From: Phallusia mammillata
Lineage: Eukaryota
Direction of reading: 5' to 3'
DNA length: 64,000 nt
Assembly (NCBI GenBank): GCA_965637545.1
Contig: OZ281494.1
Span: 10,850,001 to 10,914,000 of the forward strand
The translations under genes and the position numbers were made by a program. Shown here in pieces: positions 1 through 36,126 of this stretch (positions are counted from its first letter, which is position 1; every line of letters begins with the position of its first letter). The notes under the pieces are model-generated. The model searched no databases. It had not been told where the DNA came from and was given only the letters and a program-made list of their open reading frames with translations.

Positions 1-483
1 GTAGTAGGCTTGGGAAAACATCAGCGTCAGACCATAGGGTTAAGAAGAGGCGTTAGGGCATTGAATCAGAGTGTTTTGGGGTGTAATACGAAACACAGCA
101 TGGTGTTGGTTTTAAACTCTGTTGTGATTGTGACGTGTTTGTACAATTATTAACTTTTGGCTTCAACTTTCTCGACATTGCTTATTTATGATTTGATGGC
201 GCAATGTTCAGGGCTTACGTATAACTAGTTTGTGTACGGTAGGATAGATTACGTAACGTGTAAATTGTATGACCCGCGCTTAGAGAACGTTTGTTTTGCC
301 GTGCTATTCAATGCTTGACTGCTTTTGTGGTAGTCAGACAGGCCATTGAGCAACATTTTTGACTACAGGCAGATCAAGTGGTAAGGTTTGTTTTGTGACA
401 CTCGTTATTTACTCCAAGAGCGAAGAGCACGTCTATATCCATGACTTTCAAGTTAAGAGTTTAGTCTCTACATCATGAATGTT

Positions 484-3400
484 ATGGCTAGCGGTCAAAA
501 AGACACGACAGACCCCAACCTTGCAGGTAATAGAGTGCATATTTAGAAAATATAAACTGTGCAAGTTGGAAGCATAGCACTCAAAAACAAGGTTGTTTTT
601 ACATTAGCATCAATCATAATAGCCATAAAGCTTGTTGTTGGAATAAGATAACGTGCAGTAGGCAACTCTTGATTTGCTTATTGGTAGTCAACAGTGTAAA
701 AAACAGTACTGCCTAATTTTTTTGTCACTTCAATGTTGATAGCAGAGTTCTTGCCGGTCAGATAGACTTCTAGTTAATATTTTACGAAATTGCAACTACA
801 GCTCAATTGCTTGAAAACAATGAGTATATCAATTTAAGCCACAAACTTAATCACACGGAATTGTGAACTTTTTAAATTCATTGGGTACAACTTTGAGATA
901 TAAAGGAACAGCTGCACTAATGGTATTATGATCAGTGTTGTGTATTTTGTCATACGTATGTACAATAACAGTGATCGTATTCCCACATACCCAATGTAGT
1001 GGGCATGATTCATCAACTGTGGTTAAGGCAGCTTGAGTAAATGCTTGCTCCATACATTCTGTGAGATTGACCAAAGGTAAATTCCTTTCCATATATGACT
1101 CATCAACGTGATTCAATATTATTTATTACGCACGTATCGGGTTTGTGTGTCCAGGAAGCGATTTTCCACACCTTGTGAACGGCCTAGATTTCCAAACCCT
1201 ATTGTGAACTGTAGCTAAACGTGCGTTGAGATGTCTTCAGGATTTTGGCTGTTGCAAACAACGGATGGAAAACATTACTATTGATGTGCAAAAACCGATT
1301 TGATTAAATCCAGAGCTAATTATTGTTATAGGCCTGTAGTTTTAATTTGAATTTTTTACTGCAGAAATGAGGACATTCGAACATTTTTCCGAGGTTCTTG
1401 TATTATATCGGCCGGACCTTGCAAATATTGAACGCGTCAAAATATGCCAATACTAAAAATATATATGAGTACCTTGTTTAAAGTTTGGATTTTTTTATCC
1501 AGCTTGCTGGGACAAGGCCGATATTTTCTACGACGTCATCAAGCAACTTCGAAACTGTGATTTCAAGTATTTTGTTCGCACCAAACTTAAGCTTCCAGAG
1601 CATGAAATTGACAACATTGAGACAGACGTTTCGCGAGATGTGCAAGAACAGCAATACAAGATGCTTCTTAAATGGGAATCCAAGACCGGTGGGTACTGAT
1701 GTTTTAAGCTGGCTGTAGTCATAGCATCAAGTTATCCCGAAGCCAAAGTACAATCGTACATTATGTGTTAACTCAGTGGATTTCAAATGTCGTTCATTAC
1801 TGTGTATTTGTGTCGCCATTTCTCGCAAGTATAAGCGCTCCCTTTATTTTAAGTTTCACAAAGTTGTCCTTTGCGGGTGGAAGTAAGGATAGACTGGGTT
1901 GTTACTTGCTATTTAAACATGTGCATTAAACTACCATTCATCACTTGCTAACTAAACATGTTCATTAAACTACTAGTTCTTTAACTAAATGAGCAAATTT
2001 TAGTTTTCGCTTTGTTTTTCTTATTTCTGCCTTTTGACAAAGGCACTCTTATTAAACACTCCTCTCTTTGTACTTTTGCAGAAGATGCCTCAAAACGACT
2101 GCTAGAGCTGCTACAAGAATACAAAAATGAGTTTACCATGGATCGGGGCTCCGTGGCCGATATGAATGTCATGACACGGTTATTGGGAGTTCAGTAAATC
2201 TATAACGCACCATTGCATTTCTTGCATCTATTTGTTTTTTTAGGTCGGATTTACAGTACAGACTAGTTGTTGAAAAGGTTTGTCAAAAGTTAACAGATGA
2301 AGAACTGGAACGACTCAATAGCATTTATTTTAGGTCAACCCAAAGGTACTTCTAACAGCTGTAGATTCCATATAGTTTAACATCTTTTTGCTTCTGGGGG
2401 AAGAGGGCTGTGATTGTGGCAAAAATAATGTGGTGCTTAAATTGTTATGGTCGTAATGTTTTGCCACTGTCTGATGCTAAAACTATAGACCTGTTGGCTT
2501 AAAGAAGCTTTGTAAACTACTGTTATAAAAAACTTCCTTTTTAACACGGCGTTTTCTGTAGTTCGTTGGCATGATGATCAGTTTTTATGTAACACCAAGA
2601 AGCAAAGTAGGTTTAGTATTTAAGCTGCATACAGTGCCGTATAGGCTAATGTATCCCAAGTTTTACAATACTCCCATACGGCCAATCCCTTGTCACCAGC
2701 TGCACTGATGAGACTGTCTGCAGCTTATTTCTCATAAAAATGGCTCTACGCTTTTACTTTATTGTATCATTTTCCAGTTTGTCAAGTAACACACTCCAAA
2801 TAAGAAATTCCTTTCGTTTATTTTTTAATTTATCATTAACTTTGGGTTGCAGCAACTTCAACAGCGGAAGAGATCTTTTTTATCACATGGAGGATAACAA
2901 CTTGTGGGGTGAAGGGCGGTCAACGACGGGTGAGTATCAAATTCGACCGCATAGCATTTCCTGACATTTGTTCCAATTTTAGACAAGTTGTCACTGGTAC
3001 AGCAAAGCCTTCGAAGTATTGAACGCAACGACCTTGCCCTTGAAATTGATAGGATGAAGAAGGAATATTTAGTTTCGTATTCTATAGGTAGGTGCTACTC
3101 TTGTGCACAATTTATATGATGCATTTCAATCCTTTACCAGTGATGTGCCGAAATTTCAGTTAGCCCAATTGATTCATTTTTTCGGCCGAGTTCTTTTAGG
3201 AATTTTCCAGCCGATTGGCAACTGGGCAAAGGTCCCATTTATGTTATTACAAAACGGGTGTTCACCTTCCAGCCAGTAATACGCGTCTTATTTGTCCAGT
3301 TACAGATCACTGACGAGTTTTAATCTGCGCTGTATCCATTGCACGGTGAACCAAACCCCTGCACACATCTGTACAATTTGTACACTTTCCCAAATAGCCT

Positions 3401-6188
3401 TGTCAAAACGTTTTGGGTAAAAATTGACTAAATTTTAGGGAATGAAGCCCTGAAGGATTTGTTAATCGTCGAGAGATGGTATTATTATGTGCATCTTGCA
3501 AAACTATCGTTGTTTTGATTCAACACAACCTTAATGGCCACTGTTTGTTACTAGACGACTTGAAGGGTCACCGGTGGAGTACAACTGATGTGGAAATAGA
3601 CGATTGGCACCAAAAGGTAAGATTTATACAAACTCGCGCAAAAATTCACTTCATAGCCTTTTCACAACTTCAGGTGGTTATTCGTCGAAATGTTTCTGCC
3701 CCAAACACTCCGCACCGCAAGTCGTTCCGACTCTCAGGTATATCTTATTGCTTCTCATCTGTTGGTCCATGGTGACTTTCATACTATGTTTTCATGTTGT
3801 GGGTTTGGGCCATGTGAGAAGTGGCCGTGTTGGGCGGTGAAACACTGACGCAGTAAAATACTTTACCTTAATAGAAAATGTTTTGTTCTTGTGATTTAGA
3901 CGGTCTAAGTCAGGTGTGCACAACCTGCAGCCGTACGGTCGCATGCGGCCGCATGGATGAGTTTTTATTTTTATTTTACTCTTTAAAACAAAATATAACT
4001 TACAATAGTTTAAAAATTAATGATCAATTAGGTAGATATTTTTTGAAAATGGTATGGTCATTGATATTCTTTAATTAGCCTTGTGGTTCATGACCTGAAA
4101 CAAGTTAAGAATTTTTGATACATACGGTTTTACTGTGTGATAGTGTAATAATGCATTTGTTTGCAGCCACCTCCAGCGAACCACCGTTGCATCTTGAATC
4201 AATGGGTGAAGAACTTGTCGGATATCAAGGTAGGCAGACACAGCCGCTTTTTGTACCATTATAGACAAACCAGCAGCAAAATACATTTATAAAAAAAACC
4301 AGTCAGATTTGATTTCCCTTTCGCTGCCAAGTATATTTATTCTCTCCCTACAGAAAAAAAGCAAGACCAAGTACTTTCGTATACCACCACGTGCCTTAGT
4401 AGGCTTATTTGTATTTGGGACACTTATCGGCTCCGTTATAAATATAATCGAAATTTTACTTATCTTAGCGTGCTTATTTTTATATTCTTTATCTGGGTAA
4501 CTAAATTTGAGTTAACTAAAAACAGTACTGTAATAAAATATATTAAACAAAGATTTTCATTTTGTACACTGCTTATTACTGGCAGATATGTTGCTGTTAA
4601 CTGTTTTAAATGGTTTTGTTATATTGTTTGCGTTGCAGTATCTCACCCTTCCAGATTGTGGAGAAATTCGGAATCGTCCGACCGTTTGTATCTAAAAGGT
4701 AACATTGTCCCTGTTGATCAACGCTAAGCTCGTGCCAACTGAGATATATTTTAAGGGGCATCCAGTGATACGTGCATCGTCCAATTCAAGTTAGAAGAAG
4801 TGATTCCAGTAAAGGGTATAACTAAAAAAAATGTTCTATTACTGTATGATTGATTTTAGTATGTGGTAAACTGAATCTCAAAAGTTTGCAGTTTTTCTCG
4901 TTAAGGTACACTGCGTAAAGCTTGGTAGCAATGAGGTCAAAGTGAATTAATGCACATTGTGAAGACTTTTTCTCTTCTTAAGTGTCGTCGAAAATTAAAA
5001 CAATATCCTTCAAGGGCGTTTAGTCGTCTTTTTGTTTTCGTGTTATAAATCGTTGTTTCAAACAAAAACCTCGGTCTGACTATGCCACTATTTAAGTAAT
5101 CTGATAATTCACAGGAAAAAGGTCGTAAGTCATGAGTCCCTTTCTAAAAGAGACACGTTTTAATTCATTTTGTTTGTTTTTCCTGCAATTTAAATGCCCG
5201 GTAGATTGAGATAAAACTTTAAACGCAACGCGTAGTAAAGCTAAACTCGACTTTTGGTTTAAATCGCACAGGCATGCATTTCCGCTTGCAGTTGCCTTGA
5301 CTACCATAAGTAAATGTATTTACTTCATTAGTTTTATATCACATTTCAGATGAGAATGATCTGGAAAAAGAGGGAAAGTCACAGGAGGCTTTGAGTTTAT
5401 TACGCAAGCAAATGCAACTAGACTCTAATCATCGTGATATTCTGTTGCTCATAAAGTGTTTCCTAATTGCCGTCAAAGCGGGTAACTTCACGGAAGTCAG
5501 TAACGCTCGCGAACGCCTGACAAACCTTATTCAAATCAACATTGAGACCTCTGCGCGAGAAATCAAAACTTTTGCTGAAAAGCTACGAAACACCAACTCC
5601 AACTTAAAAGCAATTCTTTTCTGTTTAATTTCGTCTGATTTCTATGCAAGCGAGCGCTCAGAACAAAACACTACGTCACGCGGTATTGAACGCTGCGCTC
5701 ATGGGATCAAGCAAGCCAGCATACGTATACTTCAGGACGATGCCACTGGTGTACAGGTTGTTAATGGTTTTGTGATACCGGCATTAAAAGAGATGTTCAA
5801 GAAGTTTCAATACCTACATAACGATGATGAAACAAGTCGGTGTATCAACAAAGCGAAGTGCTTTCGTCACCTCAGTGCTATTGAAGGCGCGCTTGGGAAT
5901 CATAAGACACGATTAGAGTTGTTGTTTGAGGCAATAACACTTCTGCGAAGCCAGTTTGGCGAAAACGAAGTTAGTAAGTTTTACGTTTACGGGCGGTGCC
6001 TCAATGCTCTAGGTAGAACTCATATTGCCATGAAGGATCTTCCAAGCGCCAAACATTACTTCCAACTGGCTTTGGAAGCCACAAAGCAAGCTGAAGATTT
6101 TGAAAGCGAGCAGGATCAGATGGTTGAAGTGAAAACCATAGAGAACAATATAAAAAGTGTTGGATCGTTGCATGATACTGTCGTTTAA
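484..6188 (+). CDS. Multi-exon death-fold protein: N-terminal death domain, death effector domain, linker, C-terminal TPR-like helical domain
   Basis: Phase-consistent GT-AG exons 484-526 (MASGQKDTTDPNLA), 1503-1688 (CWDKADIFYDVIKQLRNCDFKYFVRTKLKLPEHEIDNIETDVSRDVQEQQYKMLLKWESKT, DD-like), 2082-2193, 2244-2345 (YRLVVEKVCQKLTDEELERL), 2853-2929 (SGRDLFYHMEDNNL), 2983-3087 (LQQSLRSIERNDL-type RxDL motif of DEDs) and terminal exon 5350-6188 (TPR-like RCLNALGRTHIAMKDLPSAKHYFQLALE). Probable small linker exons at 3555-3616, 3674-3737 and 4167-4229; 4354-4398 and 4639-4698 are uncertain. Confidence 0.75.
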
Positions 6189-6405
6189 TGAAAAATATCC
6201 TGTACTGTAAGACGAAAAATACGCTTGTTATCATAGATTTATTGCAAGTGAAAATGCTGATACGTTTTGTCGTTATTCTTAATCGCTTTTCAGTATTCCT
6301 CATTTCGTGCTTGCATCATTACCAAAAGTATTTTTGCTTTCTTGTATTTATTGGTACAAGACCTGTATTTGATTAAACTAAAAAAAGTTCTGTGGGTTTA
6401 ACGTG

Positions 6406-6419
6406 CCACTAGATGTCGC
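6406..6419 (+). promoter_or_regulatory. CTCF-like motif CCACTAGATGTCGC
   Basis: Close match to the CTCF core CCASYAGRKGGCRS. Lies between the stop codon of the upstream gene and the FoxA regulatory block. Confidence 0.45.
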
Positions 6420-6989
6420 CACTGAGACGAAATCACCCAAGCATAACACGTTTGCAACTTTTGATAAATACAGCCAAGTAGCACCAAATAAACTGTTAAA
6501 CAAAGCAGTTTATCGGAAGTTTTAAATCAAAACACCAAACATTTTCTTCACTCACAACTGTATTTTTGCTGGAAGACATTTTAACATCCAACTTACAATT
6601 CACCATATACCATACCTCAGTCTAGTACGGAGGGTAAAAGACACTTATTGTAAATTTGTTGGCTTGTTTATATATTTAGAAGCACAATGATACAAAAAGT
6701 TTGGAAGCATCATTAATGTATACAGCTTTTTTGCAAATATATCCGCAAAAATGCGATTTGAGGTAAGATTACCACTTTCTCGAAAGGCTGATACATTTTT
6801 GGGCGACTTTGTCTGACTGATAAATATAATATATTTTTCTTTAGTCCAGGGCTCGCATGAAAACAGAGTTTATCAAGCAAATGTTTGATTACAATCCATA
6901 GAAGGAAAACGTTTTTGCAAGCAAAGACTACAAAAAAACAATAATTGACCTATTGGAGCGTCTTGGGCACGAATAGCTGATATCAGCAA

Positions 6990-8120
6990 AAACGGAACAA
7001 TCAATTCAAACATCATTCAAGTTGCAAACCTGGTCGCGGACATTGCACCCGAAGCCGTTCTAATTTAAAACCAGGAACAATCGTACCCAAAAAAACTCGA
7101 TCGATTTTAGCGAAGGCCGTTGCTTGACTCAAGCAGGGTATCACGATCGCAAACAAAACATCAAAAACCTGCGTCCGCGTCCCGAAAACGCGGCTCAACC
7201 ACAATGGGACCCCCCATTGATGAATCGCATGAGGTGCATGATGACGTAGCGGGTGTGGTCCACCGGTTCTCCGATCTTTTGTTCAAATTCTATTGACGCT
7301 CTGGCTGGGGATTGTTTATTCCAAAATGGCCGCCGATTTAGCTCTGCTTAGTCGCAATACGGCGGGTTGAGGGGTGGCGGGCGGAAGAGTGTCGAATGCC
7401 GCTGAAATGGCCCCTCGCCTGGTCAATAATTAATCCAGTATTTGAACGCGCCCAAATCGTGCGAACACAACGAGTCGGCGAACTGGAATGGGAGCGCGGT
7501 GGTGACTCGCAGCGCCCGCAAATGGCAATTAAATGCTGCGCAACGGTAAGGGAAACGTCCGGACGAACACGCGACGCTTCAACCAATCTTGGTGCTTGTA
7601 AAGCGAAAGAGCCCGCGCGAGCGCTGTAAAGCGTCACGACAGGTAAGATCAAATATTTGCTGTCGGATTAATCATCAAACGGGGGAGCTGGGAGCGTTGA
7701 CTGCGCCATCGATGTTTGCTGTGCTCTTAATTGCCCGCGCCGAATCCGTTATCGTTGCCTTGCCTCGTGCTTTATCAAACTCGAAACAGTATGTTCCCGC
7801 TTTTCTTGTAACTGCTTCGCCCCGAAAGCCGCCTTAGGCATCCAGTTATATTAAAACCTGAGATCTTGCGCAATATCCCCCAGCAGGTAGACGGGTAAGC
7901 TCCACAATAGCAAAGATCATTTTCCCCTTTATCGATATCTCCATCTTCACCAAATCAATTGTTGAAAATCAAAGGTTTGTAAGCGATTATTCAACCGCGG
8001 TCGGTTCATCCACGTGCGATAACGCCCCGTGGCTGACCCCAGCGATATGGGGGAACCTCAGACAGTGCGATTTATATCTGAGGGTGCGATTCACATTCCC
8101 ATCACTCACTTGATGCTTGA
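6990..8120. promoter_or_regulatory. GC/CpG-rich non-coding block, putative FoxA distal cis-regulatory module
   Basis: Visibly more GC/CpG-rich than its flanks, with no credible ORF. Contains a YY1-like AAAATGGCCGCC (7323-7334), a Zic-like CAGCAGG (7881-7887), a TCF/LEF ATCAAAG (7968-7974) and GATA sites. Confidence 0.45.
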
Positions 8121-9869
8121 TAACGCCTTTGTCTGTCTACAATCGAAAGCCCATCGGTGCACAGGTGCTGGCTGTTTGACGATCCTAGCCGTTTCTCAAG
8201 GCAAACTCTTTTTGTTTTTGAGAGAGAAATTCGACATCAACAGCAATTTTTTTGGCAAGTTCTATAGATGAACATCCTTTATCAAGACAAAACTGCTTTC
8301 TCAATTCTGATGATTTATACTACTTTGAATATCACATCTGTCAAAAGCAACCTTAGGAAAATAACAACATATATGATTGTTGTATTTTTTTAACAAATAC
8401 AAAACTAAAACTAAGAAGAAACCTTATATATCTTTCCTTATTGACATATATCTTTTTTTTAAACAAATACTGTTTGTTTTCCAGAAGAGTTATAAATGTA
8501 AAAATTGATGACTCGAATGTATCAAATAATATAAATTGCATGCTAGCTGCAACAACTAACAAAAAAACACGTTTGGTTCTGAAAATTAATTTAACAATCT
8601 TACAAAATATATATGCAGCGTATCATTTCTTGAACCTTCTCGATAATCAAACTCATCACAAAAGTTACCATTTCCCGGACAACCTGTATAGTTGTCTTGT
8701 CGGATTATTGTTCATGATCCTCCCAGCATCTAAACTCTCTAATAGTAGAGTGCTGTTTGGCTTGCACAGCCCGATTTGCTCTGGATTGGCCGTGTCCATG
8801 TAAATTTACCTTCACGCTTGGTAATATAGACTTCTGTTTGTGATAGCCAGCAAATCAAATAGCAGGCAGATTCGTGGATAAACTCTCGCTTATTTACAGT
8901 TTCGGATTTATAACTGTATGTTCGGGCGGGACATGTGTGTACCCAGGCTTTGTGAACATACGGTCTATCAACACACATCTAAACGTGTTCAATACGTTTA
9001 ATAAATAGATCTGGTATGGTATCAGTAAATACTCAAAGTTTGCTTGATCTGTTTGAATCAACAGTGCTACGATCGTGGAAATTTTAACAACATATTTGCG
9101 AGAAAATATTGACAAAGAAACCCAAATGCGGCTATGTCTCTTTACATCAGCGCCTCCTAGTCAATGGTACGAAAGCTTGTTTGAAAGTTCAATATTGTAT
9201 CATTTGATCGCTCTGTTGACATGTATAATATGGATTTGGATTCTAAACAGCCTTTCAAGCTTTGTCAACAGCCGTGCCGGTATACTATGTTGACAGTTAC
9301 ACAATTTGATGGGCCATTGCTTTTGACAACATTTGGCGTGAGTACTTTATTTCCAGCTCACCTCTTTCGGAATATCGTGCAGTTCAATTTTAATTATTTG
9401 TTGAAACAGGCTGTGTGAATGGTTTGTGGTCCTCTATCTATATATGCTCGCCTGTGCATTATTGTCTATTCAGTGTTAAATCGTCCACAGAAGGTGCTCC
9501 TGGGTTATAAGCAAAACAAGAGTACTTATTTATTGTTTTGAATTACAAATAAATTGTAACACTTATTTTCCGAATCAAAAATGGAATTTGAACAAAACAA
9601 ACCATTTGTCGTTTTAATGCCTATATTTCTTCCCAATTGAAGATTTTGTACATTAGGCAGATTGGTTCACACGATTTTAATATTTAACATTTTGAACGCT
9701 ACCCGTTTTACAGTCGTAATCTGTGAGGATGTCGTAATTCAGGGCAAGTTGGCGCCAATTCTGGCTCGTAACTCTTACAAGGCTGGTGCAGGTCTTGGAC
9801 AAAATTGTCCTTCAGATTTCGTTGTACCTGTTAGCCCGTGGACGGTATACGGCAAAAACAGGAACGCAA

Positions 9870-10131: not shown

Positions 10132-11769
10132 ATGTACGGCACTACTCCTTCAACCGAGATGCTAGCAGCACCGACAGCAAGATACCCAGTGACTTATCAG
10201 CCCAGCTATTCGACGCCACCAGGAGTACCATCGTCCTACCAGAACGCCGTCAATGTGGTACCAACTTACAGTACTAACCCTTCGGGGGCCATCGCCAGCC
10301 CCATGACTCAAGCATTCGGAGCAAATCTGCCACATCCGTCTTCAGTAACCAACCAGTATTCGCAACAGCTTAACTCGCACGTCGGAATGTCTTCGCCATA
10401 TCCAGTAAGTCCAAATATAGGAATTAGTCCCAATATGGCGCTTGTGCCTGGACACCGACCAGTGGACAAGGGACCCAACGCTTACCGACGTACCTATACC
10501 CATGCGAAACCTCCTTACAGCTATATATCTTTGATCACAATGGCAATTCAGTCTTGCCCATCGAAGATGATGACTCTAAGTGAGGTTTATCAGTGGATCA
10601 TGGATTTGTTTCCATTTTACCGTTCAAATCAGCAGCGATGGCAAAACTCAATCAGGCACAGTTTGTCCTTCAATGACTGTTTCGTCAAAGTTCCGCGGTC
10701 GCCTGATAAACCTGGCAAAGGTTCTTACTGGAGTTTGCATCCAGACGCAGGGAACATGTTTGAAAACGGATGCTACCTACGTAGGCAAAAGCGCTTTAAA
10801 TGCGAGAAGAAGGCTGCTATTAAAGCTGCCCAACAAACCAAAGTAAAGGACGAACCGGATAAGGTTAAAGACGGAGAAAGTTATGAAGAAAACCCGATGG
10901 TGGTTGCCAACAACTCCGCTCAACTTGAAGACCACGAAGGCCACATTGACACCAAACCGGTACTAATTGGTGATCACAATTCACCATCAATGGGACAACA
11001 GCAGGAAACTAATGGTTCGAGTCTTCAGCCTTTGGAGCCAGTTGTGAACCCGTCACAGTCTTCAACCATTGCTCTTACTGAGTCAGGACAAGGTGCGCAG
11101 GCGGTGTTGTCGCCTATGTCTACCACTCTTCTGGTGGGAAACAACCAACAGCAAGCAATGTACGCCGGCTACCATCATCAAACCTTTATGCCACAGTTTC
11201 AGCAGGTGATGCAAACACCAGACGGTTTGATGACGAACTTAGCAGGACACCCGCCTATCCATATGAACGCTCTGAAACAGGACGCACAGTATTCTCGCTC
11301 GCATCCATTCTCTATCAACAGTCTGATTAGCGATCCCGAAAACAAAGACATGCGCGTTTACCAGGATCCACAAATCCAGATGCAATATTACTCTCCTCTT
11401 CAGTCGCATCCTTCCTCAGCCTTGCTTCCACCTCCTCCAGTCAGTGTCCTTCCCCAATATCAAGCCGCTCATCAACAGGAAGCTGCATCTCAGCCGATGG
11501 CGACCTCTGCCTCGTCGCCCACCACAGAACAGCCGCAGCAGCAAAGTTCGAACGCAACGGAGCTGAACCATCACGTGATGCAATCAGTAACGCCGAGTCA
11601 CGTGGCCACACCGCATCACCAACAACAACAACAACAGCAGCAGCAGCAGCAACATCTTCTGACGATGTCAGGTATCAATCAGGCACAGATATCGGAGGCA
11701 TCGTACTACACGGCTAACGTACAATCGTCAGTCATGCAGCCTACACAGGCCCAGCAGTCCCAGAGCTAA
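10132..11769 (+). CDS. FOXA: Forkhead box A (HNF3) transcription factor, intronless, 545 aa
   Basis: Forkhead domain [22 protein letters not shown]...[59 protein letters not shown] is FoxA-diagnostic. eh1-type motif HPFSINSLI starts at 11302. Confidence 0.97.
11620..11652 (+). repeat. (CAA)5(CAG)5CAA polyglutamine tract in FoxA
   Basis: caacaacaacaacaacagcagcagcagcagcaa encodes Q11. Confidence 0.9.
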
Positions 11770-14070
11770 AATGGTGAGATGTTCTAGGAATGGACATAAG
11801 CACTCGTTACTTGCGCGGTTAACGGTTTTTAAATGTGCTTTGTGCTATCAACCCTAAAATTCTCAAAGGCCCGCTTGTTACGTTTTGGTGAAACTGCAAA
11901 ACGCTAAATGTGGGTACCTAAAAATTGTACATATCTAATTCGAATACGCTGGGTATTGGCAATGCTTTGATACAAATGGGCCTATACATATCGAAACACT
12001 TTTACAAGTCTCATGAGCCTTAAAAACTGCTAGCTATGCTTGGGCACGGACTGCGTTTTATGGAAAGGTTGTGTCTTGTGCATGTGTTTGTTGCGAGGTT
12101 ACTGTTTCGCTTTTGCTAGCAAATTAGATACAAAATATATTAGCTTTAATTAAAGTTTGTTGGCATTTTTCGTGTTTTAATGTTTAGAAACACTTTTTGT
12201 ACAAAGCCTTGTTAATAAAGTACTGTGCAAAATCATAGAAATACTGTCTTGATAATTATTTTCACGTACTATCATTTGCGTTGTTTTTATGTCGTTTCAT
12301 TCCCCAAAAACAATTTTTACAAAAACGCGTTTGTCGGTTATAAGTGCGGTGTTGTGTGCCTAAAATTTTTACGTTACTGTGCTCTATTATGTCAACATGC
12401 AGCAACTAAAAACATGCATCGAAAATTTTACTTTATTAGCCGGTTGCGTGAAATTTTAACGCAGCTACATTGCTTGGACTCATTCACTCGGATTTTGATA
12501 TTCCCGCCATTGATATGTGTGCGAATGGTTTGTAAAGCGTCCAAATAAATAAACAAACATGGCAAACTGTTTGAAGAATAAACAGTGGCCGTTTACATTC
12601 CCGTAATACGACGTGTACTCAACTCGCCTCTTTACACCTAGCCTGTCGGTTTATTTATACAAGTTTTGTAAGGTGGCAATCCCGGGGCGTTCCTGATTAT
12701 TATTGGAATATTTGAGTGTAAATAGCTGAGATACACACGGTTTAATGGCAAGTTGAACAAATAGAAGTACAATTATTGGTCTACAATCCTGTATACTCTG
12801 TCAACACGAGTCTTGGGTTACTGAATTAATCGAGGAACATCATCTCGTCTGAAGCGTATAAGTTTGTCAGTTCACGTATGTGCAGATTTGCGTAGTTAAA
12901 GACTCCTGGATATATGTATTGACTTCTCAACAACTTTAAACACAACTGTTTCTTTATACATTGTGGTCCTGGTAAAGGTATGGTCACAGGTGGGTTTGGA
13001 CCAAGTTTTAAATTTTATTAATGTTTAGACTATTTTCCAGATAGCAGCTTTTTGTTTGTTTAGGCTAAAATTGGTGGTAATTTCGCTTTCAATTATTACA
13101 TGGAAAAGTTGTTTTTTGCATTAGTGTTAAATTTAGTAAATTCCAGGTGTACAAACTGCAGTAGAAGGTAAATGTGTGCCAGGTAGTTTACTATGGTACT
13201 TTTCAAAACCTATAGTTTGTAAGTGACGACACACGTCACACTCAATGCGGCAGCGAGCTGGTATAGTTGACACAAACCTTGTCTTGGTCTCTGCCATTTC
13301 ATGCCGCTTAGGCCGGTACGTGTTAAGTTTAAAACATCCCGGAGTTGATTGTTAATTACGTACGTGCTCGTTTTTTGTCTATGCTGATGGCATATTTGCA
13401 TTTGAAGAAAATTGTAAGAAACTTACATATGTTATTTGTTTTGACTGCTATAAAATGCTTGGGTATGTTAGTAAAGTGTTTGTCCCATCTATTTTCCAAC
13501 ATATTAGTGAGGCTAACTATGCATTTTGCTGCGGTTCCGTGACCGACGTTGGCAACATCAACACATGGCTCCGTTGCGAACCAAGTGGTAGTTTGAATCT
13601 GTCAGATGTTCTGCGTTAAACTGCTTATTTATTAATAAACAATTAGTGGATATATAGTTGTAATTGGAACTACGAACATAACTAATCAAACGATATGATT
13701 AAAACGGCTGTACTTTTTAGGACATCATCAATACAAAACTAAAATTTCTGTGCCATAAAATTATAAAATTTTGTTCTGTAAAGACGTAAAGTAAGTTGTA
13801 ACAAAAACTATTAAAGAGTGAAAATTTTAAAATGATCCGTATGCTCTTTCAAGTAGTGCGAGTATTCTTAAAATTTGTTTTCACTTATCTTAAAATAAAA
13901 AGCAAAAAAATCCTTTTTTGTTTGAAAACACTGAAATCATATTAGGGTAAGAACCGAAAGGGGATATTTCGAGTTTCATTGCAGTGGTGAAATAAATTCT
14001 GTCGCGCGTGTCCTCGGTTATCAAAACCAATTTTCTTTGCTTGTCTACGTTGAGACAAGTGGGTTTAACT

Positions 14071-36126
<22,056 letters not shown>

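What the first reader, a model, noticed from the sequence alone, without database searches (positions are those of the whole stretch)
484..6188. Death-fold adaptor with inverted DD-DED order fused to a TPR-like domain
The ORF track misses most of this gene because the domains are split over small exons. The exons join in phase into DD, then DED (RxDL motif), then a linker, then one large 839-nt exon with TPR-like helices. Established: FADD is DED-DD, DEDD/PEA15/caspase-8 lack a DD, and TPRs are peptide sensors or scaffolds. Inference: this is a lineage-specific innate-immune or apoptosis adaptor that could couple TPR ligand sensing to both DD- and DED-type partners. The 186-nt exon carrying most of the DD is symmetric phase 1-1, and the TPR domain is one exon, which suggests exon shuffling.
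Basis: partly seen in the sequence, partly recalled or inferred. Interest (0 to 1): 0.72.

Follow-up and report, generated by a model that had tools for sequence, protein, structure and literature searches.

The report
Sea-squirt death-domain adaptor with TPR tail
This sea-squirt gene most likely encodes a cell-death adaptor that carries a death domain, a probable death effector domain and a helical docking domain found only in sea squirts, a combination not seen in any relative examined, but no RNA evidence could be obtained and its function is untested.

Summary
Eleven + strand exons (484-6188), all GT-AG, join in frame into 565 residues. The 186-nt exon is phase 1-1 and on its own passes Pfam's Death-domain threshold (E 2.8e-7); it is closest to the TNFR1 death domain, not FADD's. 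The death effector domain (DED) is only partly shown. Its last exon, which carries RNDL, is that exon's only Pfam hit, to the end of the DED profile, and it falls below threshold (E 0.058). The joined protein has no reference, so it was not searched or folded.

The 839-nt last exon folds confidently (pLDDT 93) into a 12-helix TPR-like solenoid. It belongs to a family whose named members are all sea squirts. In Ciona, Styela and Clavelina the same domain is also one 821-827-nt terminal exon entered in phase 1, which supports exon shuffling.

Relatives carry other heads, such as a kinase end or a Sushi-like membrane segment. None of 35 scanned has a death domain or DED. Earlier notes of this scan describe the same tail family on RIPK-like kinases elsewhere in this genome.

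No orthologue was found. The adaptor role is inferred.

The parts
484..526 (+). Exon 1: start codon and 14 residues. An in-frame ATG also lies at 475 and an in-frame stop at 454.
   Evidence: donor CAG|gtaata
1503..1688 (+). Exon 2, 186 nt, phase 1-1: most of the death domain.
   Evidence: Pfam Death E 2.8e-7, above cut-off; TNFR1 DD E 2.9e-5 in PDB
2082..2178 (+). Exon 3, 97 nt: probable last helices of the death domain and the spacer between domains.
   Evidence: In frame. No hit of its own. The assignment is inferred from its position after Death profile position 56.
2244..2345 (+). Exon 4, 102 nt: probable DED helices 1-2.
   Evidence: In frame. No Pfam or PDB hit alone. Inferred from its position ahead of exon 6.
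2853..2929 (+). Exon 5, 77 nt: probable DED helices 3-4 (SGRDLF...).
   Evidence: In frame. No hit alone. Inferred.
2983..3087 (+). Exon 6, 105 nt: DED helices 5-6 with RNDL (RxDL) at 3024-3035. It leaves in phase 1.
   Evidence: The exon's only Pfam hit is DED PF01335, profile 57-82/82, E 0.058
3555..3737 (+). Linker exons 7 (3555-3616) and 8 (3674-3737). The 57-nt intron between them is in frame and free of stops, so it could be retained.
4167..4229 (+). Linker exon 9, 63 nt, phase 1-1. It has the best coding score of the linker.
   Evidence: top candidate among 762 AG..GT open segments
4639..4698 (+). Linker exon 10, 60 nt, phase 1-1. Its coding score is weak.
5350..6188 (+). Exon 11, 839 nt, entered in phase 1: the TPR-like tail domain (12 helices) and stop TAA at 6186-6188.
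   Evidence: the cassette is conserved in Ciona, Styela and Clavelina
6372..6492 (+). Candidate poly(A) signals: ATTAAA at 6372 and AATAAA at 6487.

Best explanation
One gene on the + strand (475/484-6188, 11 exons) encodes a protein of about 565 residues. It has an N-terminal death domain of the TNFR1/DR3/RIPK1 type, then a death effector domain, then a roughly 85-residue linker built from 60-64-nt exons that looks unstructured, then a C-terminal six-repeat TPR-like domain. The tail is a mobile 3' exon cassette whose named relatives are all sea squirts. In other genes it ends proteins with a kinase, a Sushi-like membrane segment, or no recognised head. Inferred mechanism: the tail docks the protein onto a peptide or onto other members of that tail network. 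The DED then recruits a DED-caspase (Ciona has a caspase-8/10), and the DD recruits DD proteins, so the protein links a sea-squirt-specific sensing or docking module to the extrinsic cell-death machinery. Shown here: the exon structure, the DD, the TPR fold, family membership and the shared exon cassette. Inferred: the complete DED, the splicing in vivo, and every functional step.
For: The exons are in frame with canonical sites. The DD passes the Pfam cut-off on one exon and matches the TNFR1 DD. Exon 6 matches the DED profile end and carries RxDL. The 60 residues of exons 4-5 fit the missing profile positions 1-56. The tail gives 170 hits at E<=0.001, with Ciona proteins at 1.9e-77 and 1.4e-30, and named members only from Ciona, Phallusia, Clavelina and Styela. 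AlphaFold gives pLDDT 93 and 12 helices, with best PDB folds LGN/Pins, KLC, CTPR and NASP TPRs. Four species share a phase-1 single terminal exon of 821-839 nt. The tail exon has no in-frame ATG before the domain starts, so it needs upstream exons. Exon 6 leaves in phase 1 and exon 11 enters in phase 1, so head and tail join in frame whatever the linker is. Linker codon usage scores 13.8 bits against a stop-free intron null of -18.9 +/- 7.9, and 0 of 3000 null samples reach it. There is no poly(A) signal between 2051 and 4532. Relatives carry other heads: the end of a kinase domain in P0007 and a Sushi-like segment plus a hydrophobic stretch in P0012 and P0155.
Against: No protein 50% or more identical to the tail exists among 1.84 billion representatives, so no annotated or transcript-derived copy of this gene was seen. 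None of the 35 scanned relatives has a DD or DED, and none matches the head exons, so the combination rests on one locus. The DED is below Pfam's cut-off exon by exon, and exons 4 and 5 give nothing alone. Linker exon 10 scores poorly, and alternative linker exons exist. No copy lies beside the forkhead gene in Clavelina or in two metagenome sea-squirt contigs.
Confidence: 0.6

Rival explanations
1. There are two genes. One is a roughly 210-residue FADD-sized DD-DED protein ending shortly after exon 6. The other is a linker-plus-tail gene, perhaps the downstream member of a sea-squirt operon that receives a spliced leader.
For: Reading through the exon 6 donor gives a stop after 10 codons. Exon 9 holds an in-frame Met. 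Many relatives of the tail are annotated with short heads that have no recognised domain. Operons with spliced leaders are known in sea squirts (established knowledge).
Against: There is no AATAAA or ATTAAA between 2051 and 4532. Exons 7 and 8 are open and coding-like in the frame set by exon 6. Exon 6 has a strong donor, TAG|gtaggt. The phase-1 exit of exon 6 matches the phase-1 entry that the tail exon has in four species.
Confidence: 0.15
2. The second helical module is not a DED but another or a degenerate death-fold (CARD- or PYD-like), or an unrelated helical segment. The protein would then be a DD-TPR protein without caspase-recruiting ability.
For: The only tool support is a 14.1-bit, E 0.058 hit on one exon. 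PDB searches with exons 4, 5 and 6 gave no DED.
Against: DED is the only Pfam family that exon 6 hits. The hit covers exactly the profile's last 26 positions and includes the RxDL motif. The upstream 60 residues are the right length for the rest of the domain. As a test of one pre-stated family, the per-family chance is about 0.058/24736.
Confidence: 0.12
3. The locus is an unexpressed or decaying chimera left by exon shuffling, with intact frames only because it is young.
For: No transcript-derived or annotated protein was found. No orthologue was found.
Against: All 11 exons are open with canonical splice sites. The tail is only 28-29% identical to its nearest known relatives yet keeps the family's nearly invariant residues and folds at pLDDT 93. 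That pattern indicates long-term constraint rather than a recent copy.
Confidence: 0.08

Closest known systems
FADD (vertebrate and ascidian FADD-like adaptors)
   Same: It has one death domain and one (probable) death effector domain in a single chain without an enzymatic domain. By analogy it should bridge DD partners and DED-caspases.
   Different: The order is DD then DED, not DED then DD. The DD is nearest to TNFR1, DR3, RIPK1 and Fas, and FADD is not among the PDB hits. It carries an extra 85-residue linker and a 278-residue TPR-like domain. Ascidians are reported to have a separate ordinary FADD-like gene (PMC1903365, PMC10923776).
Sea-squirt TPR-tail family (uncharacterised Ciona, Styela, Clavelina and Phallusia proteins such as XP_026692798.1, XP_078483285.1 and CAB3263277.1)
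   Same: The C-terminal domain is homologous (E down to 1.9e-77), has the same length, and has the same single terminal exon entered in phase 1.
   Different: The head differs. Relatives have a kinase end, a Sushi-like membrane segment, repeats of the tail itself or no recognised domain. None of the 35 scanned has a DD or DED.
TPR peptide-docking domains of LGN/Pins and kinesin light chain
   Same: It is a right-handed solenoid of about six helix pairs. These are the best structural matches (Foldseek probability 1.0, TMq about 0.5).
   Different: Sequence identity is only 9-14%. No Pfam TPR model reaches its cut-off on the window's copy. The TM scores are moderate.
Death-fold-NACHT/NB-ARC-TPR sensors of cnidarians, sponges, sea urchin and amphioxus (PMC2575513, PMC3879445)
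   Same: A death-fold head and a repeat tail sit in one protein, and these are lineage-specific expansions in invertebrates.
   Different: There is no NTPase domain here. Only about 85 residues with no Pfam hit lie between the DED and the tail.

Membership tests
Death domain (Pfam PF00531) | Profile match above the gathering score | tested here: met
   31 bits against a 22.6 cut-off, E 2.8e-7, on exon 2 alone. TNFR1 DD E 2.9e-5.
Death effector domain (Pfam PF01335) | Profile match above the gathering score over the six-helix domain | tested here: inconclusive
   Only exon 6 could be scored alone: 14.1 bits against 35.9, E 0.058, profile 57-82/82. The joined domain has no reference and was not scored.
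Death effector domain (Pfam PF01335) | RxDL motif in helix 6 | tested here: met
   RNDL at 3024-3035 lies inside the matched stretch.
FADD | DED at the N-terminus and DD at the C-terminus | tested here: not met
   The DD exon (1503-1688) precedes the DED exons (2244-3087).
FADD | DD of the FADD type | tested here: not met
   The PDB hits up to E 10 are TNFR1, DR3, RIPK1 and Fas. FADD is not among them.
FADD | About 200 residues with no further domain | tested here: not met
   The model has 565 residues with a 278-residue TPR-like tail.
Sea-squirt TPR-tail family | Homology across the whole domain of about 260 residues | tested here: met
   42 hits at E<=1e-10, most covering query residues about 5-270. 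The nearly invariant positions are kept.
Sea-squirt TPR-tail family | Domain encoded by one terminal exon entered in phase 1 | tested here: met
   Window 839 nt, Ciona 824, Styela 827, Clavelina 821, all phase 1.
TPR superfamily | Sequence match to a TPR profile above its cut-off | tested here: not met
   The best is TPR_12 at 22.7 bits against 30.1. Some relatives do pass.
TPR superfamily | Helix-pair solenoid fold | tested here: met
   pLDDT 93 and 12 helices. The top 50 Foldseek PDB matches are almost all TPR proteins.
NLR/STAND sensors | NACHT or NB-ARC NTPase between head and repeats | tested here: not met
   No NTPase hit on any exon, and the linker is only about 85 residues.

The most novel reading that the evidence does not exclude
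The sea-squirt TPR tail may be a previously undescribed signalling connector. It would do in sea squirts what DD and RHIM contacts do in vertebrates, bringing RIPK-like kinases, membrane receptor-like proteins and this DD-DED adaptor into one complex. This gene would then be the link from a large, diversifying sensor-kinase family to caspase activation.
Probability: 0.25. Interest if true: 0.8.

Novelty: new variant of a known kind. Interest (0 to 1): 0.58.

Why it matters
Sea squirts are the closest invertebrate relatives of vertebrates and are usually described as having a small cell-death toolkit. Here a death-fold adaptor shares its tail with kinases and receptor-like proteins. That gives the uncharacterised, expanded tail family a first recognisable output, namely DD and DED partners, and so a testable link to caspases. 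It is also a clear case of phase-1 exon shuffling creating a new adaptor architecture.

Tried and rejected

2. A word search with the tail exon found nothing in the 153-486 aa range. The full search found only relatives at 31% identity or less over the domain.

3. I looked for the head in relatives by tblastn of all 160 fetched proteins against the window. None matched the DD, DED or linker exons.

4. Synteny: the neighbouring forkhead gene's relatives were fetched in Clavelina and in two metagenome sea-squirt contigs. No DD, DED or tail exon lies within 10 kb. Weak collinear hits in L002 were judged to be noise.

5. Metagenome scans with the tail exon and the DD exon found nothing.

6. A word search from a Phallusia paralogue's tail, meant to sample head domains, returned only two Phallusia paralogues.

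7. PDB searches with exons 3, 4, 5 and 6 gave no death-fold hit.

8. No local Pfam library exists on the script machine.

9. Left out: Pfam, PDB and AlphaFold runs on the joined (spliced) protein or the joined DED, because a joined sequence has no reference. The joined frame was only checked and scored inside scripts.

10. Literature searches found no paper on a DD-DED-TPR protein or on this tail family.
Full report
**Observation**

Eleven + strand exons all have AG acceptors and GT donors. They are 484-526, 1503-1688, 2082-2178, 2244-2345, 2853-2929, 2983-3087, 3555-3616, 3674-3737, 4167-4229, 4639-4698 and 5350-6188. Joined, they give a 1698-nt open frame of 565 codons ending in TAA at 6186-6188.

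- Donor and acceptor contexts look normal. Three introns are 53-65 nt.
- An in-frame stop lies at 454, and ATGs lie at 475 and 484.
- The ORF track shows only the last exon as a sizeable ORF.

**Domains, searched exon by exon by reference**

The joined protein has no reference. I therefore did not send it, or the joined DED, to Pfam, PDB or AlphaFold, and that step is left out.

- *Death domain.* The 186-nt exon alone passes Pfam's Death-domain cut-off (31 bits against 22.6, E 2.8e-7). Its best solved relatives are the death domains of TNFR1 (E 2.9e-5), DR3, RIPK1 and Fas. FADD is not among the hits.
- *Death effector domain.* Exon 6 has a single Pfam hit, to the last 26 positions of the DED profile. 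The hit includes the RNDL (RxDL) motif, at E 0.058 and below the cut-off. Exons 4 and 5 give nothing alone. Their 60 residues have the right length for profile positions 1-56. From memory, which makes this a lead and not a test, they resemble the FADD DED pattern. I call the DED probable.
- *Linker.* The linker exons have no hits.

**The tail**

The last exon's Pfam hits are all sub-threshold TPR models. A full HMMER search found 170 representatives at E<=0.001. The best are Ciona proteins at 1.9e-77 (four tandem copies of the domain) and 1.4e-30, at 28-29% identity. Every named member comes from Ciona, Phallusia, Clavelina or Styela.

With an alignment of 40 relatives, AlphaFold gives pLDDT 93 and twelve helices. 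The best PDB folds are the TPR domains of LGN/Pins, kinesin light chain, consensus TPRs and NASP. So "TPR-like" is right by fold, and the domain is a sea-squirt family.

**Heads of relatives**

Pfam scans of 35 relatives found no DD or DED, and none matches the window's head exons. Other heads do exist:

- Phallusia P0007 starts with the very end of a kinase domain. About 100 weak PDB hits are nearly all to the C-terminal end of kinase domains.
- P0012 and P0155 have Sushi-like hits and a hydrophobic segment.

Many hits of about 270 residues are probably bare terminal exons called as ORFs on unannotated contigs.

Earlier notes of this scan describe more than 100 RIPK-like kinase, mini-exon linker and TPR-tail genes in this same genome. 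They also name the genome as Phallusia mammillata. I could test that only partly.

**Exon shuffling**

I mapped annotated relatives onto their loci. The tail is one terminal exon of 824 nt in Ciona, 827 nt in Styela and 821 nt in Clavelina. In each it is entered by a phase-1 intron a few residues before the first helix, as in the window at 839 nt.

In the window, exon 2, exons 3-6 together, exons 7-8 together, exon 9 and exon 10 are all phase 1-1 units.

**One gene or two?**

- The tail exon lacks an in-frame ATG before the domain begins, so it needs upstream exons.
- Exon 6 leaves in phase 1, so it joins exon 11 in frame even if every linker exon is wrong.
- The linker exons score 13.8 bits of coding codon usage. 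The null from stop-free intron pieces is -18.9 +/- 7.9, and none of 3000 samples reaches the observed value. Exon 10 is weak, and other candidate exons exist.
- No poly(A) signal lies between 2051 and 4532. Two follow the stop, at 6372 and 6487.

No annotated or transcript-derived copy exists in the protein collection. No orthologue was found by synteny or metagenome scans. I put the single-gene model at about 0.8.

**Mechanism (inferred)**

I read this as an adaptor. The TPR tail docks on a peptide or on other members of the tail network. The DED recruits a DED-caspase; Ciona has a caspase-8/10 and a separate FADD-like gene (PMC10923776, PMC1903365). The DD recruits DD proteins.

It is not a FADD orthologue, because domain order, DD type and size all fail the membership test. 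It is not an NLR, because it has no NTPase.

**Novelty**

I found no paper on this combination or on the tail family. Invertebrate deuterostomes are known for new death-fold combinations (PMC2575513). I therefore rate it a new variant of a known kind and moderately interesting.

Noticed in passing
window 10132-11769 (+): An intronless 545-residue forkhead gene of the FoxA type with a long glutamine run near its end. Its best database relatives are only 54% identical (an unnamed contig) and 51% (Clavelina). Phallusia's known Fkh matches only over the forkhead domain, so this looks like a second, divergent FoxA-type gene.
   Followed up: partly
window 3617-3673: The 57-nt intron between linker exons 7 and 8 is in frame and has no stop. 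Retaining it would add 19 residues without breaking the protein.
   Followed up: no
window 457-475: An AG (tttag) lies 12 nt upstream of the first ATG and just after the in-frame stop at 454. It could be a spliced-leader or 5'-exon acceptor, so the true 5' end may lie outside the window.
   Followed up: no
L004 (Ciona intestinalis AP043569.1) 7337-7651, 12249-12617, 14378-14749: The Ciona relative P0002 carries an extra copy of the first half of the tail domain as a separate exon. Further copies of that half-domain exon, 62-75% identical, lie downstream in the same locus. The tail is therefore itself being duplicated piecemeal.
   Followed up: no
L005 (Styela clava OZ123523.1) 6169-9516 and 18644-22424: Two tandem tail genes have tail exons that are 80% identical. 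One annotated model spans both.
   Followed up: no
window 4307-4390: An open 84-nt AG..GT segment in intron 9 has a mildly coding-like score. It is a possible extra or alternative linker exon.
   Followed up: no
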